Assembly: GCA_965637545.1 (NCBI GenBank)
Contig: OZ281494.1
Coordinates: 16,616,001 to 16,680,000, forward strand
Source: Phallusia mammillata
Taxonomy: Eukaryota
Reading direction: 5' to 3'
DNA: 64,000 bases
The position numbers and the translations under genes were made by a program. Of the stretch, positions 38,801-64,000 are shown one piece after another (positions within the stretch are counted from its first letter, which is position 1; each line of letters starts with the position of its first letter). The notes beneath the pieces are model-generated. The model worked only from the letters and a program-made list of their open reading frames with translations. It did not search any database and had not been told where the DNA came from.

Positions 38801-39788
38801 TAAAAACTTAAGTATTTGACAATTATAAAGTTAAGGAAGATAGGTTTTGTTATTTTATCACATTGTCAAAATTATTTCCGATTAAAAATGCTTCTACAAA
38901 CGATTCATATTTGATCTGTTTAACCTCACCATATTTTTCGTTACAACTGCTATTTAACCTACTGATAGCTGACTGCTGGAACATTTATGCGGAAATAACG
39001 TGTAACTGCAGACAGTTCTGTGTAGGGGTCAACTTCCGAACAATTCACAGAAACTTTGGGCATACGTGTGCCAAACCGCTTCATAGAAAGGGGTTGGTAA
39101 ACATGTTTATTCTTCTAATGTCGTAGAAACATAGCTCTGTTTTACAGAAACAAATTTGTTTTGTTGCAAACATCGTAGATTCCACTGCTAAAAATGGTGT
39201 CAAGTCAGCACGGATTGTTGTAAATAACATGAATGTTTTGTATGTCAAGTAGGACAACCTTTTTTCAAATTTCTTTAGTGTTCTTAATGCAAGAAGCGTC
39301 CGAACAAAAGTTAATATCACGCTCACATTCTTCGTGATCTAACTCATTACTGCTGTCTTGTGTCTGCAACACCAAGCACTACTAGCTTTGCATACCTTGC
39401 TTAAATGCTTTGTGGTCGTGTTGGGATTTGAAGGTAATGTCCCAGATAAGTTTTGTAAAACGTGTATTAATACATTTTTTTTCACAGCACGAACCAAAAA
39501 AATAGATATACCGAAACGCATTTGAATCGGAAAATGCAGTACATGAACAAAAACTACAAGTGGTATGATGTATCTAAAAAACAGCTTCGTAATACTTGAT
39601 CACTCCAAGTCCATGTATCCATAGTTTTTTAGGGGTATTGGAGTTTCGTAAACGTCGACTTCTGGCTGTGTTTGCTGCGTAACATTGTTGTTTTGTGGGG
39701 CAGATTGTTCTGTTCCTGACAATGTAACTACGTTTTTGAACTTGTTATTGTTAGCCACAAAATAATTTACCTGGGTTGGATATTACTT
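35277..39788 (+). repeat. Segmental duplication block 1, copy A (copy B at 55882-60751)
   Basis: Colinear near-identity in exons, introns and intergenic DNA, e.g. 36350-37000 vs 57345-58000 and 38750-39500 vs 59680-60480. Confidence 0.9.
37019..38742 (-). pseudogene. R16: type-Y CUB receptor with tandem ITIMs; 8-nt deletion in CUB exon 1
   Basis: Signal exon MTVVDKTWKYFVLETEAHLKVLVITVVLT. The aagttttg present in R23 is missing near 38447, causing a frameshift. TM ITVIIIAAATAGAVGITALAVIIVILL and tail SEYAEV, LVYSEI, VDNILY are open. Confidence 0.7.
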
Positions 39789-41050
39789 CCCACTCTTTGT
39801 CAATATCTTGCAATTCCTTACGGAGTCTTTTTCTGTCAGCAGCTGTTTTTCTAAATTAGCAAAAAAAATTCGGGATATCATTGAAGTAAACAAAACGCAA
39901 TTTTAATATCTGCAAAGTTTTTTAAACCGCTTTTGCCCAAGGTATTATGTAATCATTCGATGAATAAGATTACTTTTATAAAATGTTATTCTTTAACTTA
40001 CCTCAGAAACACTAGCGCCACGATAAGACCAATCACCAATAAACCTATCACTGAACCCATCACTATTGGCAACACGATGTTTTCATCATTTGCATCAATT
40101 TGCCCTGGTTGTAATGGTGTTGGCGGATTAAGCATACCTGAAGTAAAACAATTTTTTTGCAACTAACAATAATTTACGTTTAATGGTCTTTAACTTTAGC
40201 AATATAATTGTACGTCTTAAACACATTACACTAAAAAATTATGTTGCAAGTTTCAGTATTTTTTACTAAGAGGACCTTTTGCTTGCTTGTTCATATTTGG
40301 CTTTGACGTGTACGTTCCATATGCATCGGTTGCGGCTTTTTGTGATGGTGAAGTTGCGTTTATGACTGAAAACGAATAAACGCTCAAAACATCAAAAAAT
40401 ATGGTAAAGGGTAAAGAGATTATCGAAGTCACTTAAAAGTTAACCTACATTGTGTACACATGTTGTAATGGAAATGAACGCGGTTTTTGATTTGGCTGGA
40501 GGATGGAGTCACAACTATGTTCGACCAGTTTGGAATTTGTAACAGCTCGCAGTTTTGGTCGCACGACGATTGAGATGGGGAAAAAGTTTGACCATCTTTC
40601 GTCAGTAGAACACAGGTTCCTACACCACAAAAAAACAAAGTCTTGTATGCATCTAAAAAGGAATAAAGGTATTTGGATACTAACCAGAAGTATATGAATT
40701 TCTAAAATAAGACGGCACGGTAGCTGGTCTGACCGTTCCAGCTAAAACATGGATTTGTACCGCGCTGTTCTGTGTATTAGCTTGTAACTTAATGTCGCAT
40801 GTGAAGTAATTAGATGATGACAAGTTAATTGTTGATGACGTGGATGAGACTTCCAAAGGTTTTGTGGGACAAATATCAAATTGTCCGAATGTTCCTGCAA
40901 ACAATAACAACTTAAATACCATTAATATTGTAATGTTGTATCAATCTGTGTAAATTTAAACTGCTATTTGATAAGAATACCTGTCCAAAATCCATAAGGG
41001 TATGTGAATGGTTGCCACGCAGTAGTCGCCGCTGTCGTGGTAAGTCCTGT
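39600..41050 (-). CDS. R17: divergent CUB-like receptor, class B tail
   Basis: Ectodomain exons at about 40685-40890 and 40450-40615 are related to R1/R3. TM IVLPIVMGSVIGLLVIGLIVALVFL; tail exons 39771-39850 and 39600-39715 (DVYETPIPLKNYGYMDLE*). The signal exon is unresolved. Confidence 0.7.
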
Positions 41051-42273
41051 TTGAAAAACCAAAACACACACCTTTTTTAGTAAAGAAACTTTTGAAACCT
41101 AACAATTTTTAGTCGCATTGAAAAAAACTGTCTTTGAACAAAAAACTAAAAATGTCAAAAAGCACAAGAACACTGCAAAAACTGGAAAACTGTACATTGT
41201 CATTGACCACGTTTGAAGACCTTTAAAAGATCGTGGGCGATAACACTGTTTTGAAGTACTTACCTAAACCAACTATATTGAAAGTGTTTGTGCTGAAAAT
41301 GCATCACTAATATTTGTACAACAAAGAGACTTTTTCAAAACAATGATTCAATTTTTGTTTTAAAATTTACTAACCGCTTTTAATTTGAAGCCTAATTTAG
41401 CACCTTGTCCTTACCTTTTATTGTATTTGATGATACTAATAATAAGCTTATCATGTAAACACTTTTTACGTTCATGGTTGAAAAGCAGCTAGCGCACATC
41501 GTCTTAAAATCAAGCTAATAACAACAATGACAACACTGAACCCGAATTCTTTATTCAGCATGTTAAATAACGTCTACAAGACTTGAGTTACATAACGGGG
41601 TGTGCTAAGTTGGGCGATTGCCTTTATTGTCAGGGAATGGGATTTGTGTGAAGTATTTTGGTCGCACTCCGTTGTTTTGTGTTCCGTTTTTGTCGTGATG
41701 TAATTAATGCACCAACTCTACGTGGCAGAGAACTTCAATGCCCCGAACCTGTCTTCCGCAACACGTTACATGAATAAGCGAATTAGATTAGTCATGCTCT
41801 ACTTTCCAAATTGTATTTTCGGGCACGTTGACAACCAACAGTTGAATGAAACATATTTCCTCAGACTAAACCATATGTAGCCTTTTAACATGGATTGAGT
41901 CAAAACTACATGCCAGCCAATTGATTAAGGTTAGCAAAACCGCCTTTGTCATGTCCCGAGTCCTTGTGACCATATTTGGAAGTGAAGCAAATAAGGCTAA
42001 CCAATCACTTAGCTAAAACCAGATTTTTGAGCTATTTGTAATCGACTTTAGACCCAGCAGACCACAATTACACCGCCAGCGTGCGTTGATTAGTTGCTAG
42101 GCACGATTTGCTTTCCTGTCACAGCATCGGACTGTGAATCATCGATCGTTGTGCCGTTTGGTAGTCGACAGCGAAACATTGTTTATACTGCTAGTTGTTA
42201 AGCAGCCTTATTTAAACGTAATACATGTTACAAGATTAGATTAATAATATGACAAACACAAGTTTGGTTTGCG

Positions 42274-43207
42274 CTACTCCCGAAAAGTCGTGGTTGAGTG
42301 TATGCTTGCAGTTTCGGGGTCAACTTGTGACGAAAGATACATGACATTGTCCAAAATGACGCGTTGCGATTTAGAGTCTTCGTCTTCGCTTTCCTCTTGA
42401 ATTTCCTGCATTCCAGAGTCCTGGATCAATCTAGATCTACCGCGTCGGGCACGCCTCCCGGGTTCCTTAATTTGATTGGTGAATGCCATGTTGGCTGACC
42501 CAATCAGTGGGCTTCTTGCAGGCGAAGGTGCCAGGCTCCATGAGGAGCTTGCTGCTGACGATGGCATACTGTCCAATCCTTTGTCTATGCTCCCATACGT
42601 AAACTCCACAGGTGTGTAGGTATTGGGTTGCGGCTTTTCAGTGCGGTGAGTTTTTTTCTTGAACCTGAAAAAGTAAAAAAGCACTTTGAATCATTTTTCG
42701 GGGAAACTGTGGGAATATTTTGGGGAAAGTGTGCACAATAACTGTTGTTATTTGCCCCAGCACACTACTATACATGGTTACTGTACAGTACAGATTACAC
42801 TCACCTAGTCCTGACAAAACATGAAATTGCCACTATTGCACCAGCTATCACAATTGCAGAACCCACAGCAATGCCAATGATTAGGTAAAGATTCTCGGAG
42901 TCGGTATCGTTAGAATCTGGTTTAGTGAAAACTTTTGCTACATCGTCAGGCGGTGGCGTTTTAGTTGTATTTTGACTCCGCACACAGACAAAAACTGAAA
43001 CGTGATACATTGGATTTAACATTTTAATTTATTTCAACAATTCTCTACCACTTTGATGGCACAATTAAGTTGTTTGGAAGGTTATTTTACCTTATTTTAA
43101 TAATAGCAGTTTTAATTAAACCGATTTGATCTTAACCGGCTTACACACCAAAATATCATCTCACCTGCACATATTCCTAACAACTTCCTACTAAATGATC
43201 TAACCAT
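42274..43207 (-). CDS. R18: membrane adaptor-like member with a ~30-aa ectodomain
   Basis: Signal exon 43165-43207 (MVRSFSRKLLGICA) splices in phase 1 to VFVCVRS|QNTTKTPPP..ENLYLIIGIAVGSAIVIAGAIVAISCFV, then in phase 2 to a ~130-aa tail (FTYGSI, Ser-rich and acidic stretches, LDNVMY). Confidence 0.7.
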
Positions 43208-43705
43208 AATTATCTTGAATAAATGACATTTCAAACACTAAACTTAAACAACGTGCATATTGTTTTAACAGCTGGTCCAGTAGTCAGTCATATACTGCCT
43301 GCTGTATTACTGAATCTCGAAACATCGTTATGACGACTAAATCGTATAAGCCTATTTGTCATCACGGAGCTAATTCGTCCTGCGGTTAGATCAGTCCATT
43401 GTTATCGATTTGTGTGCACAGAAACGTCTGGTAGATATAGCTTTGGAAAATAATATTTGACAAAAGTATTGCTTTGCCCTAGAAAAAGACTTTCTTTTTT
43501 TTGAATGTTTATTAGCCTTGCACAAAAATCAATGGCATTATAATTTAAAAATACGAATACAAATGCTTGTGTTTTTCATCACGCAAATAAATAATAGTGT
43601 TGCAATTTCGTTAAAACAGTTTCATGATACGACCACTTTTTCTCAGAGCACGTGCACGACAACAAATATTAGAAGTCAGTATCCAGTACCAGGGGTTGTT
43701 GCTTG

Positions 43706-45569
43706 TTATTGATTTGGTCGCACATTCACATAAAAACTGGTCTGATTGTGGCGAGGGCTCATAACCTCGTATTCGCTTCCGGTGCTGGTGACTGATGGTC
43801 TCATTGTAGCGTATTTTGATTGCGCTTTAATTTCTTCGTACGGGCATTCCACTACTGTTGCTGATACTTCAGAGTAATGGTTAGCAGCAACAGGATCTGT
43901 TTTTAAATTAAAACATCACGAGAATTATTTTTTGTAGCCTAATTGTTTCTGTAAAGCCCTGTTACTAACTACTGTTTAGCGAGGTCGCCGATCTGTTTAT
44001 GGTTTTTAATAGTGACAACCAAGGGCATTAAAAGGGCAATTCAACATGGTGGACACACTTTATAGCCGAGATAGTTGTAATATTTGTCCATTTTTTCATT
44101 TTAGTTTTATGTGGGTTAAAATCTGAGTAAACACATACAAATTCTTTAGAAAAAATTACCTGTTTGCGTGTCAAGGTTGCCAATATATTCAAGGGTTTTC
44201 TTCTTTTTCCTGTTAAAAAATCAAAGCTTCAATTGCAAACGGTTTACCTTAAAAATCTTGTTAAACAATTTTTACATTCGATGCCTTTTTATATTCGATG
44301 CGAGTGTTTTTTCTCACCTTAATTTCACAGCAAGGCAGATAATCATGAATATAGCCAACGGTCCCAAAACACCGACAATAGCAACGACCTTTAAATTAAA
44401 TCCACCAGGGTTCTTATCTAGAAAAAAATACGAGCCAGTAGATAGATTCATAATAGTCAAAACATCCTGTGCAAAATAGAAACTCACAGATTTTTGCGTC
44501 GATTTTGAATAAAGTTGTGGTTGGTTCCATTGACGATTGGTTAAAAATAAACGGCGTTGGTCGTTCGACATGTGGTACTGCAATTTAAACATAGTACATA
44601 ATTTTAAAAAATAAATAAATAAAGAATAAATACTAATATGGCTTTAAGATTTTAAAATTTTATTTTTGAATCATGTTTTTTGCGGTTAAATTGTATGTTT
44701 CGTGGCAAGAGAAATATTGCACAAAAATGCCAACTACACTGTTTACATTTTCCGTAAATACCTCCACAGTCAATCACGTGATACGATAAGTTGAAGCCAC
44801 GACCCTCATATTTTTCATCCGAGCGAAATGAAATTTGATATCCAGCATCGTTTATTCTTACTGCTCGAATGAACTTTGAATTACAAACTTTTTGGCGTCT
44901 TGCTTCTCTTGCGCAATTCCATGCTGATAAGTGGTTGCTCACCAGAGCGTAACAAACCGGAAATGTCGTAGCACTTCCACAGCGAAAATATGGTACCGCT
45001 TAATTAACAAAAAGAAACGATTTTTAGTTACACAGTTGTGCATCATCACACATTTTGTAATTTAAATTTTACACAATATATTATTTTCGATTTTGGTTTT
45101 AGGAATTTTTATTCAAAATTATACTTTTTTAAAAATTTATGCGTTATATTTGCCTTTTACAATAAAATATAGAAAATATCATAAGTGTTCCCTGAACAAA
45201 ACATATTTGGTTATACCTATCATAACTATATTTATCTACTTGCCTTGTCGTAGTAACACTTGATCAGCACATAGCACATCCATATAATTGAAATCAATCA
45301 CCACTGCCTGATGCTTGACAACCGCATTTATTTTCCATTTGCACTTTTGGTTCTTTGGGTAAGTTCCATGATTGTCAAAGTTGGGCGAGGTCACGAAACC
45401 CGACCGATTATGAAGAAATCTTTGTGATTGTGGCACATCACAACTTGATCGAGCATAGTTTACGAAGCCTAACAAAGCGTTTTAAACGTTAGGACCCGAT
45501 TGTGTTGTTGCCTTAAACAACAAACTTACCCAAAAACGTCAGAAAATACAATATTGAATTTATTTCCAT
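43706..45569 (-). CDS. R19: canonical-looking CUB receptor with a five-tyrosine class B tail
   Basis: Signal MEINSILYFLTFL; CUB SCD..SGFVTSPNF..YPKNQKCKW / FRCG..FRSDEKYEGRGFNLSY; stalk; TM VVAIVGVLGPLAIFMIICLAV; short exon RKKKKTLEYIGNLDTQT; last exon 43706-43896 with YSEV, YEEI, YATM, YEVM, YVNV. Confidence 0.85.
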
Positions 45570-46114
45570 TTTGAAAAATCAATTAGTAATATCTGGTATG
45601 AACTTCAAGATATTGCTTCTTTCCTCTTACACCAATCCTCTACGTCTTCTTTTTTAACGATTGCAGATTTTTCTATACCTTACACTCAACCCTAAGGGCC
45701 GAATTTCTTTTCTCGCTTAGAAAAGCTAACCAGAAGAACAAAGTTGGAATGATGGAAAACAGATGTATTGGGCGATGTACAGTTTGCTTCATGGCATGAA
45801 TCACAATAGATGTCACGAGTGAAATCTAGGTGCCAACCTAATTTCATTTGTAATATCAGACGTCTACAGCCATTGAAAATTTTTGACAATACAAAAGCCT
45901 CAAACTAATATGTCTAGATTTCGGTTGTAGCAAAATGAGGTATTGAAGTCTTTAGCACTTCATAGACATTTCAAATGAAAAAACATTGCTTGAGATTGTT
46001 TGCTGCAGTTTGAGGAATAATTTTGAGACGCAAATAGAAACATATAAAACAATGCATGTTCAGTGTCAACATTTACCATCGTCAATGTGTTTTTTGTGTA
46101 AGTGACATTAGCAG

Positions 46115-48523
46115 TCAAACATTAGACGTATTTGATTCTGCTGGAGGAGTTGGTAGGCTTCTTTTTTCCATATTGTTGTTGTAACTTCCAGTCCTGCGAG
46201 CAGAAATCTCGGCGCTTTCATACAAAATATTGTTTACGATTTGTTTCTCGCTTTCCGGTTTGTCCGTCACTGACACGCAACAGTATACGTCACGATCAGT
46301 GATCACCCTTCCCCTTTCAAAAACCGTTACGTCATTCGCTGCGACATAACTCCTTGAGTGACTGTTGAAACTTTCCTCGCTTTTAATTTGTCTAAATGTT
46401 GTCGTTGTTGTTTGACTGTTAGCCATGAGCGGAACAGGATCAGACATAGTATAGGGGTTAAGGTTTTCACTTTCTTCGTTATTATTTTGGGGTTGAGCTG
46501 AACTCTTGTTGGAATTTCTGTAAAGTAACTTTATTGAAATGCTGCAATAAATCGAAACGAGGTAAGAGTGTATCGCTTTGCAAGTTGGTATGTTTGATCA
46601 TGGATCTTAGTTTCTAATCACAAGCCTTGTTATTACTTTTCCAAGAACAACTTCGACACTGTCTGTGCTAAAGTTAATTAAAGACCGCTCGCAAGTTTTT
46701 CTAGGAAAGTTGACATCGTCATTATACTGCTAGCGATGACGTGTTACATGGTTTTACTGTCTGGCATATGTTTATTTTTTTGCCTAAATTTAAATATGTT
46801 CACAGTAGCCTATTTTTGTTTAGTCGTTTCGTTTGCCTTTTTTCATGATTAGCACTACAATTTTATGTTAGAATATATTAGAAGAAAAAGGGGTATGTTT
46901 GATTAATCCTTACCTGCGTACACACAGTATAACCACAGCTAGTGTAGTGCCCACCATTAGAAATGCTACCACTCCTGCCATAACATATAATATCTCCCTT
47001 CCTGAAAACACAAGTTTTTATAAATATAGATATGATCTAAAAATAGTATGATGAAAATGTTTTTCACTACAATACCAAACCGTTTAGTTCAGATTAAACG
47101 TAGTGGAAAAAGCGTATTTTGTTTCGTTTGGTAAAACTGTTCAAATTACACCAACCTACGGAGGCTTGAACCTCCATTGCTGTTGTTGAGAATGTTGTTG
47201 TTGTTGTTTTGATTGTGGTTGTTTTTGTTGGCTCGTGCGAAAAAGTCGTTGATGTTGACAAGGTGTTGATCTGTGTTAACGTTTTCAAGGTCGATGAAAT
47301 TGTGGATTGCGTTGTTGGCAAGGGAATCGGTGGAGCTTGGGTTGGATCAAACATTGGTTCCGTTGGTTCCATTTGTATTCCTAAAGTAGACAACACTTAA
47401 ATCTTCTGTAAACCCGACTTCGGTCGCGGCCATAAGTCCTATAGATTTTCACCTTTCGTGATGTTTTCAATGTTGAATGCCAAAGCAAAGCCCTCTCTTT
47501 GGTTTATGCTGTCGGTGTAGAATCTAATCCTAAATTCATTGTTGCTGCTGATCAGATTTCCATTAACTGAACTGCAGATACGTCGGGCAGCGGATCCACT
47601 AAAGGCAGATGTCGCGGATGTTCCTATTACGTAACAGAGCTGCGTGTTTGTGGTTCCACAAAGAATTTTTGCATCTTTTTCTCCTGAACGACACGTAATT
47701 TTTTAGAAGGCTGCTACATGTTATGAAAAAAATATATTGTCTGACTTCCGCAGTAAAATAGTCATATAGTTAAACAGTACTTTAAAATACTAAAGCACTC
47801 ACCAGGTAGGAGCTCAAGCTGATCAACACAATTTCTTTGGTCACAAAATCCGTTTTGCTTGCAGAGATTAGAGTCGCTCTCTAAATCCAACTTCAAAATC
47901 CTAACTACAAGGATTTCTTGTTCCGGATTTACTTGGAAGATCCAGTCGCATCTTTGGTTAGCTGAATACCGGCCGTCGATAACTGGAGCAACTAACACTC
48001 CTGTTTTCTGAGTGATAGCGCGGTTGGCGTCTGGCACATTACAAGACAGTGTTGCAGTTTGCGACGCTGCCGTGTGTACTGCAAGGTAGAAACGTATTCT
48101 GATTAGAAGTACTGCCACGATTCAATATACAAGTTTGCTATTAAAAATCGCACAGAATGTCTGCAAAAGTGTACATTACTCATTGTATAGATCCAAACAG
48201 CAACATACAAATTAAAAAAAACACAACTTTCAAGTAAGTTATATATTTGCACATTTGGAAAATTGTACAGTGCTTGGCCGCATTAATCAACCAAATCAGG
48301 ATGTTAAAACTGTTTCAACCTTACAAAAAGTAGAGGTATAAAATCCAACTCTCACAACTCTTCCAAGTTCGACTTATGCCATGACACAACATAGGTTTGT
48401 AATTTAGTAAAATAATAACTATTTGGACTCAAATTTACGCATACTGTAAGTTTTAATGTATAAATTACCTGCTAAAAAAAGCCACAACAATTTATTTCGA
48501 AAATCAGGAGACTTCGCAAACAT
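46115..48523 (-). CDS. R20: 8-Cys CUB receptor with long mucin stalk, class A tail
   Basis: Signal MFAKSPDFRNKLLWLFLA; CUB LSCN..YSANQRCDW..CVDQL / ILCG..RFYTDSINQREGFAL; Thr stalk; TM ILYVMAGVVAFLMVGTTLAVVILCV; tail NPYTM, DVYCCV, IVNNILY. Confidence 0.85.
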
Positions 48524-49932
48524 TTTTCCCTGTTATTAGTGAAAACAAATTTATTTAATTTACAGTTCTGCAAAAAAATAATAACTGACATACTGACAGT
48601 CAATGTACTCAATCAAAGTTTCTGATGCCTCTGAGCTATTTTTTGTTGAAACCAACACCGTTTCCCGATAACATAAAAGCGACTAAATTCAAATTTTAGC
48701 AAAGAGGATTATTGGTCACTTGTTTTCACTGGTAAAGTAGCGTCATCCCATGAGCGCACCGAAATTTACCCGAGCTACATAAAATAAGCTTTCAAAGCAA
48801 CGTGAGGTGATTCCAATCACGTTGTACTGTTAATCGTTTCTGCTTTATATATCCCGGGTACATTTTATTGTTTCAAAGATAATTGCTTTACTGCCTTTAA
48901 CCCGAGTTTAGATAATAACAACGCTAGTTTAGTATACAAACAATGTTCGTTTAAAATATGAGTAATAAAATTTTACTCTGAATCACATATATTACACCCG
49001 ATAACACAACAACACACAGTTTAGCGCAGTTCTAACTAAAAACGCAATTAGGTTTTGAATTAAAGAAATACTTTTTTGGAACTATTGGTCCAAGTCACAA
49101 CATATTTCATGTTTTGGCACTTGAAATTTAGCAACAAATTAAAATCCCTTGTCATTTTGGCAAGAAGTTGGCAGTCAACGCACTCATTTAGGTTTGCTTA
49201 ATACGGAAATAGTATGAGCAGGACTTTGGTCCCAACGCCATTCATTAATGCAAGGAAGTTGCGTTCTCCGTGTCAAATATAATTTTTAAACAGTTCTCTT
49301 TGTCCCTGTGTTTAAATTATATAGCTAAACTGGGCAATTATATAGCTAAACTCGTTTAAAATTGCCACGGGAGTCTTACACATATATTTACAGTTTACAT
49401 GTTTTAAGGTTTTTTTCTGTAAGTTACATATTTTGGCGTCGTATCTTCAAAAAACTTATGTGGGTTTATTATTGTTTATTTTTTATATTTAGTTTGATTG
49501 GCAATGAAACAAGAGTAGAACAAAATTTCACAAAAAAATACGATCAAAAGCAACAAAATCAGTGTTGGCAAACGTTGGTGAATCAGTGGTAACACCATAT
49601 TTGGCTGCGATGCAGACTGAATATAACTGGCACCCTCTTCTTGCTAACTTGGGTTTCGAATGGCAGAGCGTCGTCGCATGAATTGTACAAAAAAAGTTCA
49701 AGCGAATAATCACACGGCACGCCATACTGAACAAATTATTTCAAGCATGCTTTACAATATAAAACATAAAGTTACAGAAACTTATTATTGGCGTGTTTCA
49801 GCAATTGATTAGACTTTTAGTCTGGGAACGATGACTGCAGCAAACATGTGATTTTCACGTTTGGTCATTTGAAGGCGCGCTTCTATATATACGGACTAGT
49901 ACTAGTATGTACTAATCTACTCGGAAAGTTTG

Positions 49933-51716
49933 TCACATGTTCATGTACGTAGCATCATAGGAAACTCGGCGAGCAGGTATCGGCGCCTCATAGAAGTCCT
50001 CGGTGGTTGTTTCGTTCACATATATGCTGTTATGATCGGCCTTTTGCTGCTTAGAACCCTCTCCTTGCGTGCCAACATTGATGTACATTGGTTGCTCACC
50101 AGTAGGTTGTGATTTTTCGGTCGCTGTTTCTTGCGTATCAGCTTCAGGTACTTGCTCCTGAACTGAAAGTGGATGTTCGCTACCTATAAAATCATGCAAA
50201 AACACAGAAAATTAAGAATAAAAAATGCGTGTTAAACAAGTCATATTGAAGTGAACAAAGTTATATTTAAACTAAAATGGTTTAGTGTTGTTAGTTGCGT
50301 TGTCAATTAAAACTTCGTTGTTTTTTAGCCAAACACAGTGATTTTTGGATGCACAATTTATTGCCAACATAGTTTGATCATAGGACGAAATTAATTTGCT
50401 TTTTTGTACCTACGTCGTTTTGTTCGTGCTGGCTTGTCGTTGCCCCTAAAACAGAATAACATGAACAAAAGTTGTACTAGATAAAATATTATTAGCTCCG
50501 ACTTCCAAAAGTATATTTATTACATATTAGCAATCAATGCTGCAGCCTCGAAATTACGTTTTAAAATTAGGTGACTTACCTTATCATGCAACACACTAAT
50601 ATTACGATGGCTGCAATCGCCACTAATCCTCCCGCAACGATTCCAATTATTGCTTCCGTTCGTAATGAAGTTGCTTCTGGATTGGGAGCCAGCACTGAAA
50701 CACACAAACATCACTTTGTTCTCATGACCGTTGTGTGCGTATTGAGTAATGTGGTTAGTGCAATATGAACTATTTTGTTGAATAAGGAGGAAGTAAAGAA
50801 GCGCTTTTTAAGAAGTTGGGGGTTCGATTGCTGTTTGCGAGCAAGTTTTGTCATGATAAACTTTCGACTTAGTGACTATAATATAAATCTGTCACAATGG
50901 AAACTCGTGCATTATGTGAAAAAAAAAAAACAAATAAAAAAACGCTTACCAGGACAGTCGGTCAAAGTGTAGTTCATTTTTAACACGACACCAGCCGGAG
51001 CGCTGGAGTTAATTGCTAGTGTGAACCAAGGGTAATTTCCACTAAAGTTTTTCACGTTCATCCCCGGCAAGTGGCAAGTACTGTCTGTGGATTGAAGGAC
51101 AAAGCACTCGGTGTTGTTTATGCTCATAGGCCCCATGTAGGTCATTCCTTCAAACAAATGTATATTCTTTATACTGTAGTTTTTAAATTTAAAATTCAAC
51201 ATTATTATGTTTAACGTAAAAACATTCTTTGTTTATATTGTTACTACGTAACTTCGATTTGAAAATAATAATCCTTAATCAATGACTCAACTACCAGCAC
51301 CTTTTAAAGTAATATTACAAAAATACAACTGTTACGGATAAGTTGTATACTCAAATATAATAATCAAACTTCAGGAAACTGACAAAATAAAGCCAGAAAA
51401 CCAACCTGATGGGAACTGAATTTTTGTGTTCTCATTTAGCAGTTCAATTTTGCCGATGAACACTAACTTAACGGACGGAAATGGGATATCTTGTGTTCTA
51501 GTTAAGTTATATTGAGCATTGGTGTAGCTATACTCTTGGTCAAGGTTAAAGTCGCCGCATTGAAGTTGGGCTTGAGTTGTTCTTTGAAATAGAACCACTA
51601 CACATAGAAATAGTTAGTATGTTAATTACACTGCAGAATTTATCTCATTTGTTTGATTACTTACCTTCTACGATAAGAAGATAAAACTTGAATGATTTAA
51701 TGTAGCAGAAATTCAT
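49933..51716 (-). CDS. R21: divergent CUB-like receptor, class B tail ending YMNM
   Basis: Exons 51665-51716, 51406-51597, 50950-51147, 50580-50694 (TM AIIGIVAGGLVAIAAIVILVCCMI), 50414-50445 and 49933-50183 (MYINV, IYVNE, FYEAP, TYMNM*). Phases are 1-1-1-2-1. Confidence 0.8.
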
Positions 51717-55881: not shown

Positions 55882-56340
55882 GTCATCTTCTTATCAAAAA
55901 TGATTTTTAGTGTATGTGTATAGGTTTATAGCAATCACTTATTACCTACCGCTAAGTAGGGTGAGATGGTCAACGCATTGGCAAGTTGCCAACGTTCCAT
56001 TACAAAAACTTGGTCCATTCATTCTGGCTAGTTTTATGCAGTTGACAGTAATAAACAGAACGTCATGGTTGATAACTGGAAACTGCCAGTAACATGATTG
56101 TGCCTGGGATATAGTTACGGGTGAAGAGATCTTTCCTGACATGTTAGAAATCAAACCTGAACTCACATCACAAGGTAGAGTTGAACCTAAACCATAAAAT
56201 TGGACAATGTGTGCCGTCTTAAATATTCTGGGAACTGGTAAATGACAAAGTGTTTACTGCTTCTACATGAAGTAATTTTATGACTTACCTTGACTAAGTC
56301 CAATGCAACCAGCACAGCATAATACGAGAACTATATAAAC
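55882..56340 (-). pseudogene. R15b: 5' fragment of an R15 duplicate (partial signal exon, CUB exon 1, 5 nt of CUB exon 2)
   Basis: Aligns with 35277-35758. The start codon is replaced by the hAT element at 56341, and everything 3' of aag|atgac is missing. Confidence 0.8.
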
Positions 56341-57344
56341 CAGGGATGGGCAAACTTTTCAGTGCAAGGGCCGCATTCAAAAGTTTATAATCTTACCGGG
56401 CCGCATAGTATTTCACCGACGACCAATTGCTTGCTTGTTGTTTTGTTTTAAAACAACTGATGCAAAGAATAAGGTTTGTATCATATATATACCATTTAAA
56501 GTCGCCTAAAATGCTCTGATTAACAATTTCTGACTAGTGCATAAATTTAGCTCAACGGAGCTAACTGTTTATGACGTCATAAACTGTATTGTGACGATTG
56601 CAGTGCCTGTTTTTTCGCATTGTTTGCACGTAATAAGCGGATAAAAAGCCTGGCACATATGGTTACTAGACTGCTAATCTTTTTTTCCAGTCACACGAAA
56701 TCTGTTTTAGCAGTTTAAAAATCAAAATATTTAGCAAAATAGATTGCGGCCGCAGGTTGTGCACCCCTGCGCAAAATTATTACATAGTATATTTTCAGCT
56801 TTATGCAAATACGTTTGTTCATGACTGTACAAACATTGGTTGAAACGCTACAATTGTAATTGTTTCAAAAAAAAACAAGCGTTTGTTGCAACAAAGGCTG
56901 AACCACGTTTTTTGTTAATAAAATCCGAGTGCCAACATTAAACAAAAAGTACTGCAACGACCTAAACATGATCCAAAGTGACCAAAGTTTGGGCGTCAAC
57001 AGTGCAAAGTAGGCTGTTTTTGAAAACGTGAATCGCTTTTACTTTTATCGAACGAAGAAATTGTGTCAAGTGACGATTTGCATAATAACGTGGCAGAAAC
57101 AACAAGCTAAAGCACGTGAAAAGTATCTGTGTTCAGTTCCAAAGTATCGAACGGGTACAGATACTGCATATGGCATTGGTATCGGCAAGTCGCACCCCCG
57201 GTATTTATCGGCAAGTCGCACCCCCGGTAACTCTGCGCCTGTGCTCATAGTACTATTCAGCGTTACTGGGAAACATTTGGCGGGCCGCATAAACTCCTTT
57301 GGCGGGCCGCATGCGGCCCGCGGGCCGTAGTTTGCCCACCCCTG
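56341..57344. mobile_element. Non-autonomous hAT element, 1004 bp, without a matching TSD
   Basis: TIR cagggatgggcaaact / agtttgcccacccctg with gcggcccgcgggccg subterminal motif. The flanks differ (atataaac vs ttctatgg), and about 590 bp present in the paralog (35759-36350) are missing. Confidence 0.9.
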
Positions 57345-58012
57345 TTCTATGGCTTTGGTGGGTTGGTCACTTTACCATTTTCATTTAAGGTTTGGTGAAC
57401 ACAAAGTATCGCTATTGCCATGAGTTTAAACCATGGCGATTACTTTGTTTTGTATTTATACTTACCCTAGTATTTTACAATGTTTGTTTTTAACATCTTG
57501 CATATTTTTTTGTATTTAAAAGTTGTATCCATCTCCAGCATACAGGGTAAGGTTGAGGCTGTAGTTGGTTATACACATATCCTGAAAATATGCTACTTTC
57601 GAAGCGCCACACGGAAACTCTAATGCGGTCTAGTCAAATAAAGCATTCTATCATTATAGCTGTTGCGTAGTGTTTCTTGATGTTTCTTCCGTAGATACCT
57701 TAAAAGTTAAACACTGTATCAAGCTTCTGGGTCGCTTAAATCAGCTATTGTGTCGCAACGTTTTTTTGATAATCGTCTAAAACGCAACTAATTGTGACAA
57801 CCTTGGTATGTATTGGGTAAGCGAAAAAAAAACCGCACAACAAAAATTATATTTTTTTACATTTTAATATTTTTATGTACCTTTGCCAAATAATAAATGT
57901 TTGTGGTTGAGGCGAAATACGCAAGTTTATGACTTAAAACAATGTTTATGAGATGAAGAATTTAAAGATGTTACAGGGACAAGCCATGTCAAAACACACT
58001 TCATGTGTTTCT

Positions 58013-59669
58013 TTACTTCTTTTCCATGTATAGAATGTTGTCAACTTGTATTCTTTCGCTTGCAGATGGGGGCGAATTTTCTTCAGTCTCACCGATTTCG
58101 GAATACACAAGCGTTTCATCTCTTTTCGGTTTATGTATTTCAGCGTATTCCGAACTGTCACCTTGCTCAGTATCAGTTGACACAGTGACGGGCCTAGAAA
58201 ACGTCGAGGTTTCTTGTTGTGTTTCTACTTTCTTGTTGCTTGGAATTTGACCTGTTTGTCTCTTTTTTCTTGTGTGCTTACATCTGCACAAATTTGAAAA
58301 CGTGTAACATAGTGTACGACATAGTGGCAAGAAGTAAAAGACAACAAATGATTAAAGTACCTTAATAACATGATAATTATCACGACAAGCGCAGTTATTC
58401 CTACTGCAGCTGTGATGATTACGGTGATTTTTCTCGCATGTTTGCTAGAAGTTGCGGACATAGGTGTCGTTTCAGTCTGGCTGTCACTTTTGGTCGAATT
58501 ATAGGTGTACTTTGATGCTGCATTAGCGAAAGGATGTGTTACTGGTCGTATCATCTTAGTCCCGTATTTACGGCAACAAATAGGCCTGCGTTATAAATTA
58601 AACCAACGCCAAAGCGGTTGTTTAATGCTATTAAACAAAAAACCTTTTGGGTAACCTGGGTGTGAGTATTAAAAAATAGGTATGCAAAATGTATGACTTT
58701 ACAGAAATGATCAACCGACTGTAAACTTGATTTAAACTTTTGACAATTGAATTTTAAATATCGCCTGTACTTTTGAGAGTAGGATGGAAAGGCAACTGTC
58801 AAAAGATTAGGGTAAATATTTACAACCCTTTCCTAAATAATAAATACACTAATACTAAAATTTGTGCCAGTATTTAATTGATTTAATAGGCTTGGCCACC
58901 TAAAAAAACACGAGAATAAAAAAATAAAAAAAAGCATATAAGAATTACACTGCGGAATGCTTACCTGACTTTAATTTGAAATAATTCAGTTCAAATCCTG
59001 GTTGGTTGTTTGTAGCACTCGACAAAAACTTGATGTCATATGTAGATAAATTGGTTTTTAACAGCGATACCGTACTGCACTTATATTTATTTTTTCGTTT
59101 GGTTTGATTATGTGGGGTGTTTGGTGATCCCAATACAAAGCATATTTTGTTTTTTGTTTTCCCACACATGTACAGTCGGTTTTCTTTGTCGTCTAGAAAC
59201 ATAGCGTCTCACAAAAGGTGCACAAGTATCTTTTAATAATGTGGGAAACGTACCTCCTAGTATAGTAAAGTAATCTTCGCATTTACAAAAATTCAAACTT
59301 CCATTGCAAAACTGATTTTTCTCATCTTTTACAACTTCGAAATGGGTTATTACAATCATCAAAACTTCCTTATCAGGGTTCATCGGAAATTTCCATGTAC
59401 ACGATTGATTGGCAGGGTATGTCTTGTTTTCAAGTGCGTTAAAACCAGGTGAAGTAATTCGTCCATGTATGTTGTTTTCTACCTTCGCACTCACATTGCA
59501 ATTCTGACTGTTTGTTACACCTGAACAAACAAAACAAATTTGCGTGAAAACATCCCGATTTTCAGTCATAGAAACGCTTACTTGTAAGAACTACCATAAT
59601 CACTAATACTTTCAGGTGAGCTTTGTTTTCTCGAACGAAAAGTTTCCACGTTTTGTCAACAACCGTCAT
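58013..59669 (-). CDS. R23: duplicate of R16 with intact CUB exons and tandem-ITIM tail
   Basis: CUB exons are open (..MNPDKEVLMIVITHFEVV..). The TM is 5 aa shorter than in R16; tail SEYAEI, LVYSEI, VDNILY. The first stalk exon is partly deleted, so the reading frame across the stalk is uncertain. Confidence 0.65.
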
Positions 59670-60562
59670 TGCTTTAGTGGTCTTTGTTTTTGCTTTTATA
59701 CTTTCACCTTGTTGCTCACTGCTGAAACGCCGCTAAAAACAAGTATTTGACAATTATAAAGTTAAGGAAGACAAGTTTTGTAGTTTCATCACATTGTCAA
59801 AATTATTTCCGATTAGAGATGTTTCTACAAACGATTCATATTTAATCTGTTTAACCTCACCGTATTTTTCGTTACAACTGCTATTTAACCTACTGATAGC
59901 TGACTGCTGGAACATTTATGCGGAAACAGTGTGTAACTGCAGACAGTTCTGTGTAGGGTCAACTTCCGAACAATTCATTGAAATTTTGGACATAAGTTTG
60001 CCAAACCGCTTCATGGAAAGGGGTTGGTAAACATGTTTATTCTTCTAATGTCGTAGGAACATAGCTCTGTTTTACAGAAACAAATTTGTTTTGTTGCAAA
60101 CATCGTAGATTCCACTGCTAAAAATGGTGTCAAGTCAGCACGGATTGTTGTAAATAACATGAATGTTTTGTATGTCAAGTAGGGCAACCCTTTTTCAATT
60201 TTCCTCATTGTTATTAATGCAAGAAGCTTCTGAACAAAAGTTAATCTCACGATCACATTCTTCGTGATCTAACTCATTACTGCTGTCTTGTGTCTGCAAT
60301 ACCAATACACGCTGCTAACATGATACTGTTGGGTTACTGCTAACTTTGCATACCTTGCTTAAAATGCTTTGTGGTCGTGTAAGGATTTAAAGATAAAGTC
60401 CTTTATTAGTTTTGTAAAACGTGTATTGTAATACAATTTTTTTCACAGCACGAACCAAAACATAAATACACCGAAACGCATTTAAATCGAAAAATGCAGT
60501 ACATGAACAAAAACTACAAGTGGTACGATGTACCTAAAAAAAAACAGCTTTATAATACTTGA

Positions 60563-62217
60563 TCACTCCAAGTCCATGTATCCATAGTTTTTTAGGGGTA
60601 TTGGAATTTCGTAATCGCCGACTTTAGGCAATGTTTGCTGCGTAACATTGTTCTTTTGCGTGGCGGGTTGTTCGGTTCCTGACAATGTAACAACGTTTTT
60701 GAACTTGTTATTGTTAGCCACAAAATAATTTACCTGGGTTGGATATTACTTTTATAGTTATAGTTATATTTAAACTAAAATGGTTTAGTGTTGTTAGTTG
60801 CGTTGTCAGTTAAAACTTCGTTGTTTTTTAGCCAAACACAGTGATTTTTGGATGCACAATTTATTGCCAACATAGTTTGATCATAGGACGAAATTAATTT
60901 GCTTTTTTGTACCTACGTCGTTTTGTTCGTGCTGGCTTGTCGTTGCCCCTAAAACAGAATAACATGAACAAAAGTTGTACTAGATAAAATATTATTAGCT
61001 CCGACTTCCAAAAGTATATTTATTACATATTAGCAATCAATGCTGCAGCCTCGAAATTACGTTTTAAAATTAGGTGACTTACCTTATCATGCAACACACT
61101 AATATTACGATGGCTGCAATCGCCACTAATCCTCCCGCAACGATTCCAATTATTGCTTCCGTTCGTAATGAAGTTGCTTCTGGATTGGGAGCCAGCACTG
61201 AAACACACAAACATCACTTTGTTCTCATGACCGTTGTGTGCGTATTGAGTAATGTGGTTAGTGCAATATGAACTATTTTGTTGAATAAGGAGGAAGTAAA
61301 GAAGCGCTTTTTAAGAAGTTGGGGGTTTGATTGCTGTTTGCGAGCAAGTTTTGGCATGATAAACTTTCGACTTAGTGACTATAATATAAATCTGTCACAA
61401 TGGAAACTCGTGCATTTTGTGAAAAAAAAAACAAATAAAAAAACGCTTACCAGGACAGTCGGTCAAAGTGTAGTTCATTTTTAACACGACACCAGCCGGA
61501 GCGTTGGAGTAAATTGCTAGTGTGAACCAAGGATAATTTCCACTAAAGTTTTTCACGTTCATCCCCGGCAAGTGGCAAATACTGTTTGTGGATTGAAGGA
61601 CAAAGCACTCGGTGTTGTTTATGCTCATAGGCCCCATGTATGTCATTCTTTCAAACAAATGTATATTCTTTATACTGTAGTTTTTAAATTTAAAATTCAA
61701 CATTATTATGTTTAACGTAAAAACATTCTTTGTTTATATTGTTACTACGTAACTTCGATTTGAAAATAATAATCCTTAATCAATGACTCAACTACCAGCA
61801 CCTTTTAAAGTAATATTACAAAAATACAACTGTTACGGATAAGTTGTATACTCAAATATAATAATCAAACTTCAGGAAACTGACAAAATAAAGCCAGAAA
61901 ACCAACCTGATGGGAACTGAATTTTTGTGTTCTCATTTAGCAGTTCAATTTTGCCGATGAACACTAACTTAACGGACGGAAATGGGATATCTTGTATTCT
62001 AGTTAAGTTATATTGAGCATTGGTGTAGCTATACTCTTGGTCAAGGTTAAAGTCGCCGCATTGAAGTTGGGCTTGAGTTGTTCTTTGAAATAGAACCACT
62101 ACACATAGAAATAGTTAGTATGTTAATTACACTGCAGAGTTTACCTCATTTGCTTGATTACTTACCTTCTGCGATAAGAAGATAAAACTTGAGTGATTTA
62201 ATGTAACAGAAATTCAT
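60563..62217 (-). CDS. R24: chimera of R21-type ectodomain/TM with the R17-type terminal tail exon
   Basis: Exons 62166-62217, 61907-62098, about 61451-61648, 61081-61195 and 60917-60948 copy R21. The next downstream exon, 60563-60678, copies R17 and is in phase 1. The acceptor of the third exon has changed from aag to aaa, so function is uncertain. Confidence 0.6.
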
Positions 62218-63455
62218 GATTGTAACAAATTCTGTAGCATAACCTGTCAAAAATTGTATGATATTGTATTATGTTCACCTGCACCATGACACAACAAACG
62301 TAGTAACACATTATAGTAAAATTATACATTTTCAAAACAATTTAGGGTAAGATAAGTATAAACTTAAATTGGTGACTAAATTATTAACGTATAACCGATA
62401 AACTTGAAAAGCAAGATTCAAGTAAAACAAATATACGTAAAAATTAAACATTCGTAAAAGTGCGAAGTACTTATCCTCCCTTTTCACCCGTGTCTACTAA
62501 TATAGATTGGCCACCAGAACGTGACCATGGGTTCTTAAGTTGTTTCTTTGTGACGTAGGGCATGCGTACGCTATTCTGTTGCGGGTCGCTCAGGAAGTCG
62601 GGATATGACACAATGTATTAGAATTACCCAAGTCTGACCTGATCACCTCAACTATGCATTCCTCAAAATAATGCTAAAACAATATTTAAGTGGCTGGTTA
62701 CACATTTTCACAATTCTGTAAAAATGAACCATCATCATTGGTTATTAATGCATCATAAGCGCTGCTCTTTGACTGCTTAACTCTCTTTGTTTTAAAGTCC
62801 TATTCGCTCTGTGATCTGGGTTGTTCATACGTTTATATGTAAACAAATTCGCGTTATGTTTTTTTTTATCAACTGCACTTGCTGCTGTTATAAACTTCAA
62901 AAGTAATGGACTTTCTAAAGGCGTGCTTATGAGATAAACAAATTTCGTGCAACAACAGCTGAAGACGCAATCCCGGAAAAGCTTCGCGATTTTTTTTTAC
63001 AAAAAAGGAAGGATTTGTAAAATTGTTTTTGTCAGCTATAACTGAGTGACTTACAATTCATCCTTTAAAAATAATGAACGAGAAAAAAAGTTTGTAATAT
63101 TACTGTCAATCGCTTTGCTTTGGGATATTTTATGGCACGCTTAAACACTGTACCTTATGTTTTACCATTTATTTGCATTTGTTTTTGAATGTAAAATTAA
63201 ACTACACTTTTATTGTGTTTGTAGGGGTAACAAAACTTATGGCACAATTTTTGACCTATTAGGTCTCATGTACTTTAGTACCAGTTGTAAAAAAACCTCA
63301 ATCGACCGTCGTACGAAATACAAAAACTTTTGAATCTGAAAACTCAGTTTCAACTTCTGAGTTTTTCGGCATGCCTCATTCAGTGAAAGCAAAAACCACT
63401 TTGAATTCGGGCTATGGCTGAGCGTTGTTTGTGTAACATGACACATACAGTATTA

Positions 63456-64000
63456 TCACTGCAGCTCTACGTACACAGGTTTATGACAAATCGGTTTTTC
63501 GTATTGGTTCTTTTCGCTTGACACTGGGTCAATGTAGTCGTAATGGATGGATCCTGTTTCGGTGTTTGTCGGGGAATTTACGTACGATGTGTTGTTTGTT
63601 CCTGAAGTGCCCAAGGGCGTTGCTGGCGGATGTTCTTTGGGCGCTTGTCTGACGTTAGGTGTCGCTGATGATTTTGTAGTTGGCAATCTTCGACGCATTG
63701 CACGATTCCGACTGTTAATAAAGTTTTATGCAAAACAAAATTTAAGTTAATTGTCACGTAAAGATATTCAGACACACAAGTAGTATCGAAGTAAAGTGAT
63801 TGTTTGGGAGTGTTAAGGTGATACAAACCTGGAACTGTTTACAAAACTTTGCTAAACTCCTTTAAGCCATTTTTTGTTGTGTTGGATGTTGACGTTTGTA
63901 TTACGTGTAACTTATTACGTACCTTTTTAGTTGTATAATGATGATCATCAAAATAAATACCAACACCAGTAAAATTCCAGATAATATTGATGTTGCCGTG
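63456..64000 (-). CDS. R25: duplicate of R22 (tail and TM; remainder beyond the right edge)
   Basis: Tail ..SYVNSPTNTETGSIHYDYIDPVSSEKNQYEKPICHKPVYVELQ*; TM exon from about 63920 to the window end. Confidence 0.75.

What the first reader, a model, noticed from the sequence alone, without database searches (positions are those of the whole stretch)
60563..62217. A 10.5-kb deletion joins the R21 receptor in frame to the R17 tail
The duplicate block jumps from the homolog of 39788 to the homolog of 50259, removing R21's own YINV/YVNE/YMNM exon plus R18-R20 and most of R17. R24's 32-nt juxtamembrane exon (60917-60948) ends in phase 1, and the next exon (60563-60678) is a phase-1 open copy of R17's last exon. 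The product reads ..RTKR-RTEQPATQKNNVTQQTLPKVGDYEIPIPLKNYGYMDLE*. This appears to be a tail swap caught in the act. Caveat: the acceptor of R24's third exon is mutated (tttgaag|g to tttgaaag), so that exon would be frameshifted or skipped; skipping keeps the frame.
Basis: seen in the sequence. Interest (0 to 1): 0.85.

Follow-up and report, generated by a model that had tools for sequence, protein, structure and literature searches.

The report
Hybrid receptor gene made by deletion
In a row of sea-squirt-type surface-receptor genes, a 10.5-kb deletion in one copy of an old duplication joined the front of one receptor gene in frame to the signalling tail of another, but this hybrid has a broken splice site here and no RNA was seen, so it is a clear but ordinary case of gene shuffling.

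Summary
Block B (55882-64000) is a diverged tandem copy of block A (35277-53756) and lacks 10,470 bp of A (39789-50258). That interval holds the R17 body, R18-R20 and R21's own tail exon.

- **Junction (60751/60762):** it joins two unrelated introns through a 10-nt templated filler. This points to non-homologous end joining, not unequal homologous crossover or misassembly.
- **Frame:** R24 exons 1-5 (R21-type) continue in phase 1 into an R17-type tail exon. R17 and R21 share the same exon phases, so the frame is kept.
- **Age:** "caught in the act" is not shown. The duplication is old (flanks 81-96% identical). The near-identity of R24 to R21 is a 1.38-kb gene-conversion tract (60762-62138) that stops at the junction, with a divergence island in exon 3.
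- **Expression:** R24's exon-3 acceptor is AA in the window. Two RNA contig sets hold only spliced R21 mRNA with R21's own tail.
- **Other individuals:** contigs of two DNA runs break exactly at 60762 and 62138. This supports the junction indirectly. They show only the intact acceptor.

Best reading: a real hybrid gene, probably disabled or silent in this haplotype. It is a new member of a known kind (KIR/FCGR-type hybrid genes).

The parts
60563..60678 (-). R24 exon 6: R17-type cytoplasmic tail exon (phase 1, 37 codons plus TGA), with motifs YEIP, YGYM and YMDL
   Evidence: Searches give the translation. tblastn shows 78% aa identity to the R17 tail at 39603-39713. All 13 nt differences lie in the first 72 nt; the last 44 nt are identical.
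60679..60751 (-). Remnant of the R17-type last intron, including the 3' half of a possible 36-nt R17 mini-exon that the breakpoint cuts
   Evidence: 1 mismatch in 73 nt against 39716-39788. The mini-exon (39806-39771 in R17) is open in phase 1 with AG/GT, but no RNA evidence was obtained for it.
60752..60761 (-). 10-nt junction filler ATAACTATAA (minus strand), a slipped re-copy of the adjacent ATAACT
   Evidence: It is absent from both parental sequences. The junction string is unique in the window.
60762..60916 (-). R21-type intron 5 remnant, 1 difference from 50259-50413
60917..60948 (-). R24 exon 5, the 32-nt juxtamembrane exon (phase 2 to 1), identical to R21's
   Evidence: In R21 this donor is used in RNA (run X9).
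61083..61197 (-). R24 exon 4, stalk plus transmembrane segment, identical to R21's
61451..61648 (-). R24 exon 3, second half of the ectodomain. Its acceptor at 61650-61649 reads AA instead of AG. It has 6 substitutions against R21 (4 change the amino acid).
61907..62098 (-). R24 exon 2, first half of the ectodomain, 1 substitution against R21
62166..62217 (-). R24 exon 1 (start codon and signal peptide). Its 3 substitutions against R21 tell the two mRNAs apart.
60762..62138 (.). Gene-conversion tract shared with R21 (50259-51637): 12 differences in 1377 nt, 7 of them in an island at 61504-61649
   Evidence: Fisher p = 3.7e-5 for the island. Contigs of DNA runs X2 and X5 end at exactly these two coordinates.
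39789..50258 (-). Interval of block A that has no counterpart in block B (10,470 bp): R17 exons 1-7, R18, R19, R20 and the R21 tail exon
49933..51716 (-). Parent gene R21: 6 exons, 279 aa, own tail with YINV, YVNE, YEAP, YDAT and YMNM
   Evidence: The model is confirmed by spliced RNA contigs.
39600..41475 (-). Parent gene R17: 8 exons, 292 aa, intact ORF, all sites AG/GT
55882..64000 (.). Block B, the distal copy of the roughly 21-kb tandem unit: R23 = R16', R24, R25 = R22'. It runs off the window.

Best explanation
R24 is a real hybrid gene.

1. A tandem unit of about 21 kb carrying receptor genes R16-R22 was duplicated long ago.
2. In the distal copy, a 10.47-kb piece running from the last intron of the R17 copy to intron 5 of the R21 copy was lost. 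The two unrelated ends were sealed by non-homologous, probably polymerase-slippage-assisted, end joining, which left a 10-nt filler.
3. R17 and R21 are built on the same exon-phase plan, with a phase-1 intron before the tail exon. The join therefore places R21-type exons 1-5 (signal peptide, two-exon ectodomain, membrane span, juxtamembrane piece) in frame with the R17-type tail exon.
4. Later, and still ongoing in the population, gene conversion from R21 homogenised 1.38 kb of R24 right up to the junction, leaving an island of differences in exon 3.
5. In the haplotype of this window, the exon-3 acceptor is AA, so the normal mRNA cannot be made. No R24 RNA was found. The hybrid is most likely a silent or disabled copy here, not a working tail-swapped receptor.

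Shown: the architecture, the junction, the frame, the acceptor change, the conversion tract and the expression of R21.

Inferred: the direction of the event (deletion), the repair pathway, the presence of the junction in other individuals and the loss of function.
For: **Architecture and breakpoints**
- Block structure and breakpoints.
- There is no homology between the two parental breakpoints, and neither flank is repeated elsewhere in the window. The filler is a re-copy of the neighbouring ATAACT.
- The junction string is unique in the window.

**Direction of the event**
- R17 and R21 are complete genes with canonical splice sites. The missing interval supplies exactly their missing halves plus three whole genes.
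- R21's exon 5-to-own-tail splice is seen in RNA.

**Frame**
- The phases are identical in R17 and R21.
- The R24 reading frame is open over 234 codons if the old exon-3 boundary is used.

**Conversion**
- Non-coding divergence between 60762 and 62098 is 5 in about 800 nt, against 4-19% in the flanks. One run of 518 nt is identical.
- There is a sharp step to about 6% divergence right of 62138.
- Exon 3 plus its acceptor hold 7 differences in 146 nt (p = 3.7e-5).

**Disabled or silent**
- The acceptor is AA.
- No in-frame rescue AG was found on reading the intron.
- RNA runs X9 and X13 show only R21 letters in exon 1. X9 continues into the R21 tail. RNA depth over 60359-60811 is 0.

**Junction in other individuals**
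- In DNA runs X2 and X5 (two studies), the shared contig ends exactly at 60762 and at 62138.
- R24-type contigs start at 62109, an overlap of 30 letters, as a 31-letter word graph would give at a branch.
- Only one loose end leaves 60762, and it is R21's intron. The second branch must therefore lie on the reference.
Against: - No listed contig was shown to bridge 60751-60762, because 72 rows were hidden. Support for the junction outside the assembly is therefore indirect.
- All runs were contigs, not reads. Contigs drop minor variants and cannot show absence of RNA or of the AA allele.
- Both DNA runs show only the intact AG at 61649. R24 may therefore be intact in other individuals, which weakens the reading that it is disabled.
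- The tail exon keeps an open frame and an unchanged C-terminal motif (dN/dS about 0.4 on 13 changes). That fits past or present function.
- The age of the deletion cannot be placed between the duplication and the last conversion.
Confidence: 0.7

Rival explanations
1. One reading: R24 is a working, newly tail-swapped receptor. It has R21's binding part and signals through an R17-type tail, either from AG alleles or from an exon-3-skipped mRNA.
For: - The frame is open across the join.
- The promoter side is 94-97% like that of the expressed R21.
- The tail's C-terminal motif is unchanged.
- Both independent DNA runs show only the intact acceptor over R24/R21.
Against: - No R24-type RNA appeared in two RNA contig sets that do hold R21 mRNA.
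- The acceptor is AA in the window.
- Skipping exon 3 removes half of a two-exon, cysteine-bearing ectodomain.
- Body dN/dS is about 0.66 on 10 changes, which does not differ from neutral.
Confidence: 0.2
2. One-step origin. The deletion and the R21-identical tract arose together and recently. A large gap in block B was repaired by copying R21 from block A, starting from the homologous right side, and the copied end was then joined to the R17' intron. In that case the swap really is young.
For: - Identity to R21 is highest next to the junction, with 1 difference in 566 nt.
- The filler is typical of synthesis-dependent end joining.
Against: - A single copying event should leave uniform identity. 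Instead there is a 4.8% island in exon 3 and about 6% divergence from 62139 on.
- The junction seems to be present in the reference and in two further individuals (indirect), so it is not a rare new allele.
- A conversion tract would stop at the junction anyway, because homology ends there.
Confidence: 0.1
3. Assembly artefact. Either block B is the other haplotype of block A placed in tandem, or the junction is a misjoin.
For: The cluster is repetitive, and no bridging contig was listed.
Against: - Divergence between A and B is 4-19% with many indels, against under 1% between individuals.
- There are no N runs in the window, and 2.1 kb of unique DNA separates A from B.
- A-type and B-type contigs occur together in both X2 and X5.
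- A misjoin needs shared sequence. These breakpoints share none and carry a filler.
- Contigs break exactly at 60762 in two runs.
Confidence: 0.04
4. Reverse direction. The R24 arrangement is ancestral, and block A gained 10.5 kb by insertion.
For: None directly. The two-copy comparison alone has no polarity.
Against: - The insert would have to begin with a tail exon and end with the first seven exons of another gene, completing two genes at once.
- The filler exists only in block B.
- The B junction cuts a sequence that is continuous in R17.
Confidence: 0.03

Closest known systems
Hybrid KIR genes on contracted human KIR haplotypes (Traherne et al. 2010, PMC2816608)
   Same: Both lie in a tandem cluster of single-pass surface receptors. 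An intrachromosomal deletion removes the genes in between. The 5' part of one gene, with its promoter and ectodomain, is fused to the 3' part of a neighbour, with its tail. Copy number and sequence exchange vary among individuals.
   Different: According to that paper's abstract and section headings, the KIR events are recombination at transposon (Alu) sites. Here the ends share no homology and carry a filler. The KIR hybrids were screened for in many populations, and that paper has an expression-analysis section. For R24 no RNA was seen. The ectodomain here is not an Ig domain and has no detectable relatives.
Chimeric FCGR genes formed by recombination across the human FCGR locus (PMC8183472, abstract only). 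FCGR2C and the SIGLEC14/5 fusion are cited from my own knowledge.
   Same: The ectodomain of one paralog is joined to the membrane and tail part of another inside a segmental duplication. This changes the signalling motif.
   Different: That paper's abstract attributes the FCGR events to recurrent non-allelic homologous recombination.
Haemoglobin Lepore (delta-beta fusion by deletion), from textbook knowledge
   Same: A deletion between two tandem paralogs leaves an in-frame 5'-A/3'-B hybrid under A's promoter.
   Different: Lepore arises by homologous unequal crossover within exons or introns of near-identical genes. R17 and R21 are unalignable at the breakpoints and share only their exon-phase plan.
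Conversion-homogenised paralogs with exon divergence islands
   Same: R21 and R24 are nearly identical in their introns but keep a cluster of differences in one exon.
   Different: Here the island also holds a splice-site lesion. The tract is bounded on one side by a structural junction.

Membership tests
Hybrid gene by intergenic deletion in a tandem receptor cluster | Two parental genes lie in tandem in the same orientation. The hybrid has the 5' part of the upstream gene and the 3' part of the downstream gene, and the DNA between them is missing. | tested here: met
Hybrid gene by intergenic deletion in a tandem receptor cluster | The reading frame is preserved across the join. | tested here: met
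   phase 1 on both sides
Hybrid gene by intergenic deletion in a tandem receptor cluster | The hybrid transcript is made. | tested here: inconclusive
   only R21 mRNA in the contigs of X9 and X13. Contigs cannot show absence.
NAHR (unequal homologous crossover) product | The breakpoints lie in a stretch of shared homology, and the junction has no extra letters. | tested here: not met
   no homology and a 10-nt filler
Gene conversion between paralogs | A tract of near-identity with sharp ends sits inside more diverged flanks, introns included. | tested here: met
Unitary or young pseudogene | There is a disabling lesion in an otherwise open gene. | tested here: met
   The acceptor is AA at 61650-61649 in the window. 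It was not seen in X2 or X5, so it may be polymorphic.
   Pfam gave nothing on the exon-sized pieces of R21 and R17 at E up to 10. There was no relative among 1.84 billion representatives and no atlas hit above 0.85. The whole spliced domain has no reference, so it was not searched or folded.
ITAM- or ITIM-bearing paired immune receptor | A canonical ITAM (YxxL/I, then 6-8 residues, then YxxL/I) or ITIM ((S/I/V/L)xYxx(I/V/L)) in the tail. | tested here: not met
   Read. The R24 tail has YEIP (P at +3), then YGYMDL. Only one YxxL is present, and position -2 is Y. The R21 tail has YxN and YMxM type sites instead. Binding partners are untested.

The most novel reading that the evidence does not exclude
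R24 is a segregating, functional hybrid. Haplotypes with the intact acceptor, as the contigs of X2 and X5 suggest, would express a receptor with R21's ligand-binding part and an R17-type tail. R21 and R24 would then form a pair with the same ectodomain, kept identical by conversion, and different signalling tails. That would make paired-receptor evolution directly observable in a non-vertebrate chordate, in a receptor family with no known relatives.
Probability: 0.15. Interest if true: 0.6.

Novelty: new member of a known kind. Interest (0 to 1): 0.3.

Why it matters
The locus shows, with both parents and the exact junction still readable, how a shared exon-phase plan lets a random intron-to-intron deletion produce an in-frame exchange of signalling tails between unrelated ectodomains. 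That is the raw step behind paired or mosaic receptor families.

It matters mainly as a clean example. It is also a marker for population work on this cluster: the junction, the acceptor allele and the state of the conversion tract can all be genotyped.

It does not yet show a new function.

Tried and rejected
- **Pfam on exon-sized pieces of R21 and R17:** only noise.
- **Exhaustive HMMER search with R21 exon 3:** six weak multi-stretch hits. Pfam shows Ig-like repeat domains in three of them and unrelated or no families in the rest. I rejected them as compositional matches.
- **Protein-atlas feature search:** nothing above 0.85.
- **Whole spliced proteins:** they have no reference, so I did not send them to the homology, Pfam, structure or contig look-up tools. 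The fold of the ectodomain is therefore unassigned.
- **Tandem-repeat search around the gene:** none.
- **Homology or repeat elements at the two parental breakpoints:** none, so NAHR or a transposon-mediated event is rejected.
- **In-frame rescue acceptors upstream of exon 3, read:** the AG 27 nt upstream gives TAA at once, and the others are out of frame.
- **Paper searches for an ascidian receptor family with these features:** nothing relevant.
- **Loose-end sequence of an X5 contig at 61167:** not in the window.
- **R17's 36-nt candidate mini-exon:** could not be checked. The tails of the two other genes with the same C-terminal motif have no such exon.

Full report
**1. What is in the sequence**

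The window is AT-rich animal DNA (35-40% GC) with no N runs. I did not verify the species.

The gene in question, R24, lies on the minus strand. Reading searches gives six exons:
- E1 62217-62166: start codon and signal peptide.
- E2 62098-61907 and E3 61648-61451: two halves of an ectodomain of about 130 aa with four cysteines.
- E4 61197-61083: stalk and membrane span.
- E5 60948-60917: 32 nt.
- E6 60678-60563: tail, ending in TGA.

Every splice site is AG/GT except the E3 acceptor, which reads AA. With the old exon boundary the frame is open for 234 codons. With the next AG, 1 nt downstream, a stop follows at once. Skipping the 198-nt exon keeps the frame.

**2. The duplication and the missing interval**

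Self-BLAST shows:
- 57345-60751 matches 36350-39788 at 86.8%.
- 60762-62996 matches 50259-52517 at 96.4%.
- 63003-64000 matches 52745-53756 at 88%.
- 55882-56342 matches 35277-35760.

A scan for membrane-span exons puts minus-strand genes at:

| Gene | TM exon position |
|---|---|
| R16 | 37435 |
| R17 | 40066 |
| R18 | 42884 |
| R19 | 44388 |
| R20 | 46978 |
| R21 | 50641 |
| R22 | 53743 |
| R23 | 58422 |
| R24 | 61144 |
| R25 | 63987 |

So a unit of about 21 kb holding R16-R22 was duplicated in tandem. The copy holds only R23 (= R16'), R24 and R25 (= R22').

The copy lacks 39789-50258 (10,470 bp). That interval holds R17's exons 1-7, R18, R19, R20 and R21's tail exon.

I rebuilt both parents:
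- R21 (51716-49933) has six exons and 279 aa. Its tail carries YINV, YVNE, YEAP, YDAT and YMNM.
- R17 (41475-39600) has eight exons and 292 aa, all AG/GT, and ends in the same C-terminal motif as R24.

**3. The junction**

A three-way alignment and a direct comparison give the following.
- R24 follows R21's intron 5 up to the letters ATATAACT.
- Ten letters absent from both parents come next (ATAACTATAA, 60761-60752 on the minus strand). They re-copy the neighbouring ATAACT.
- R24 then follows R17's last intron, starting 73 nt before the tail exon.
- The two parental breakpoints share no homology within 400 nt on either side. Neither flank is repeated elsewhere in the window.
- The junction string is unique.

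This is the signature of non-homologous end joining with a templated insertion. It is not an unequal homologous crossover. It also argues against a misassembly, which needs shared sequence.

On the R17 side the breakpoint falls inside a 36-nt stretch (39806-39771). This stretch has AG and GT at its ends and is open in phase 1. It may be a small R17 exon, but I could not check it.

**4. Why the join is in frame**

R17 and R21 have unalignable ectodomains but the same plan:
- phase-1 introns through the ectodomain;
- a membrane exon that ends in phase 2;
- a 29- or 32-nt juxtamembrane exon that restores phase 1;
- then the tail exon.

Any intron-to-intron deletion between these two introns is therefore in frame. 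Other genes of the cluster join the membrane exon straight to the tail in phase 2.

**5. Direction and age**

Deletion, rather than insertion into block A, is the economical reading.
- The interval completes two genes and holds three more.
- R21's exon 5-to-own-tail splice is used in RNA.
- The filler exists only in the copy.

The duplication is old. Window-by-window identity of the flanks is 81-96%. Other individuals hold 75-84% of the stretch's 31-letter words, which means under 1% difference between individuals.

The 96.4% figure is not uniform.
- From the junction to 62138 there are 12 differences in 1377 nt.
- Only 5 of these are in about 800 nt of intron.
- One run of 518 nt is identical.
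- Right of 62138 divergence steps up to about 6%.

This is a gene-conversion tract between R21 and R24 whose left end is the junction, where homology stops.

Inside the tract, 7 differences cluster in 146 nt (61504-61649). That is exon 3 plus the acceptor lesion (Fisher p = 3.7e-5 against the rest of the tract).

The deletion can only be dated between the duplication and the last conversion. A one-step origin, in which the gap was repaired by copying R21 and then end-joined, is not excluded. It does not explain the island or the step at 62138.

**6. The coding changes**

- R24 and R21, exons 1-5: 3 synonymous and 7 non-synonymous differences, dN/dS about 0.66. This does not differ from neutral.
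- R24 and R17 tails: 13 differences (5 synonymous, 8 non-synonymous, ratio about 0.4). All lie in the first 72 nt. The last 44 nt, encoding the C-terminal tyrosine motif, are identical, although the 3' flank just beyond differs. This is weak evidence that the tail was under constraint for much of its history.

**7. Public reads**

All runs offered were stored as contigs. I laid two DNA runs from different studies (X2, X5) and two transcriptome-sized runs (X9, X13) on 59000-63500.

*RNA*
- X9 holds a 927-nt spliced contig covering exons 1-5. X13 holds two shorter ones (exon 4 with part of exon 3, and part of exon 2 with exon 1).
- They carry R21's letters at the diagnostic sites they cover in exons 1-3.
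- The X9 contig runs on from exon 5 into R21's own tail exon.
- No RNA contig lies on 60359-60811, the R24 tail and its flank.
- So R21 is expressed and its model is confirmed. R24 RNA was not seen. Contigs drop minor forms, so this is not proof of silence.

*DNA*
- In both runs the contig shared by R21 and R24 ends exactly at 60762 and at 62138.
- R24-type contigs begin at 62109, a 30-letter overlap, as a 31-letter word graph gives at a branch.
- R17-type and R21-type contigs leave the stretch at 60751 and 60762 as loose ends.
- Only one loose end leaves 60762. The second branch there must therefore lie on the reference, that is, on the junction.
- This is indirect support that both individuals carry the junction. 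No bridging contig was among the rows shown.
- At 61649 both runs show only the intact acceptor. At the other diagnostic sites X5 shows R21's letters and X2 shows a mosaic that is neither reference type.
- Either R24 is more fully converted and intact in those animals, or the assembler kept one path. Contigs cannot tell which.

**8. What the proteins are**

- Pfam finds nothing on the exon-sized pieces.
- An exhaustive search of 1.84 billion representatives with R21 exon 3 finds only weak multi-stretch hits. Pfam shows Ig-like repeat domains in three of them and nothing related in the others.
- The atlas gives nothing useful.
- The spliced proteins have no reference, so I did not send them to the search or folding tools.
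That is untested here.
- The tails hold tyrosine motifs but no canonical ITAM or ITIM. R21's are YxN and YMxM types. R24 and R17 have one YxxL. What they bind is inference only.

**9. Comparison and verdict**

The closest known cases are hybrid receptor genes produced by deletions in tandem clusters.
- KIR (PMC2816608) and FCGR (PMC8183472).
- From general knowledge, SIGLEC14/5 and haemoglobin Lepore.

R24 shares their architecture but not their homologous-recombination mechanism, and it lacks evidence of expression.

The finding is real and cleanly documented. It is a new member of a known kind, of modest interest. It becomes more interesting only if intact, expressed alleles exist.

Noticed in passing
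window 35277-64000: A tandem unit of about 21 kb carrying seven receptor genes (R16-R22) is duplicated. The copy (R23, R24, R25) runs off the window's end, so its full extent and any third copy are unknown.
   Followed up: partly
window 61504-61649: There is an island of 7 differences (4 change the amino acid, plus the acceptor lesion) inside an otherwise near-identical R21/R24 conversion tract. DNA run X2 carries a third combination of letters there (T at 61504 with T at 61511).
   Followed up: partly
window 60762-61167 (run X5): One X5 contig matches the R21/R24 juxtamembrane and membrane exons up to 61167 and then continues into sequence that is not in the window. This is another copy or a structural variant with the same 3' exons.
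   Followed up: partly
window 26394-26489 and 29817-29912: Two other genes end in the same C-terminal pattern as R17 and R24: Y-E-I-P, then 6-7 residues, then Y-M/V-E/D-I/L-E-stop. In these genes it sits in a long single tail exon joined in phase 2.
   Followed up: no
window 39771-39806: This is a candidate 36-nt phase-1 mini-exon in R17's last intron (AG/GT, open frame). The B-copy junction cuts it in half.
   Followed up: no
window 60665-60669 (run X5): The R24 tail exon is polymorphic in X5. Two letters are R17-like and one is new, changing two residues near the start of the tail.
   Followed up: no
window 31166-32297: Self-BLAST shows a tandem array with a period of about 128 nt and 75-90% identity between copies.
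   Followed up: no
window 52518-52744: A 228-bp piece is present upstream of R21 but absent from the R24 copy (62996/63003). It lies where identity between the two blocks drops to the 85-95% of the right flank.
   Followed up: no
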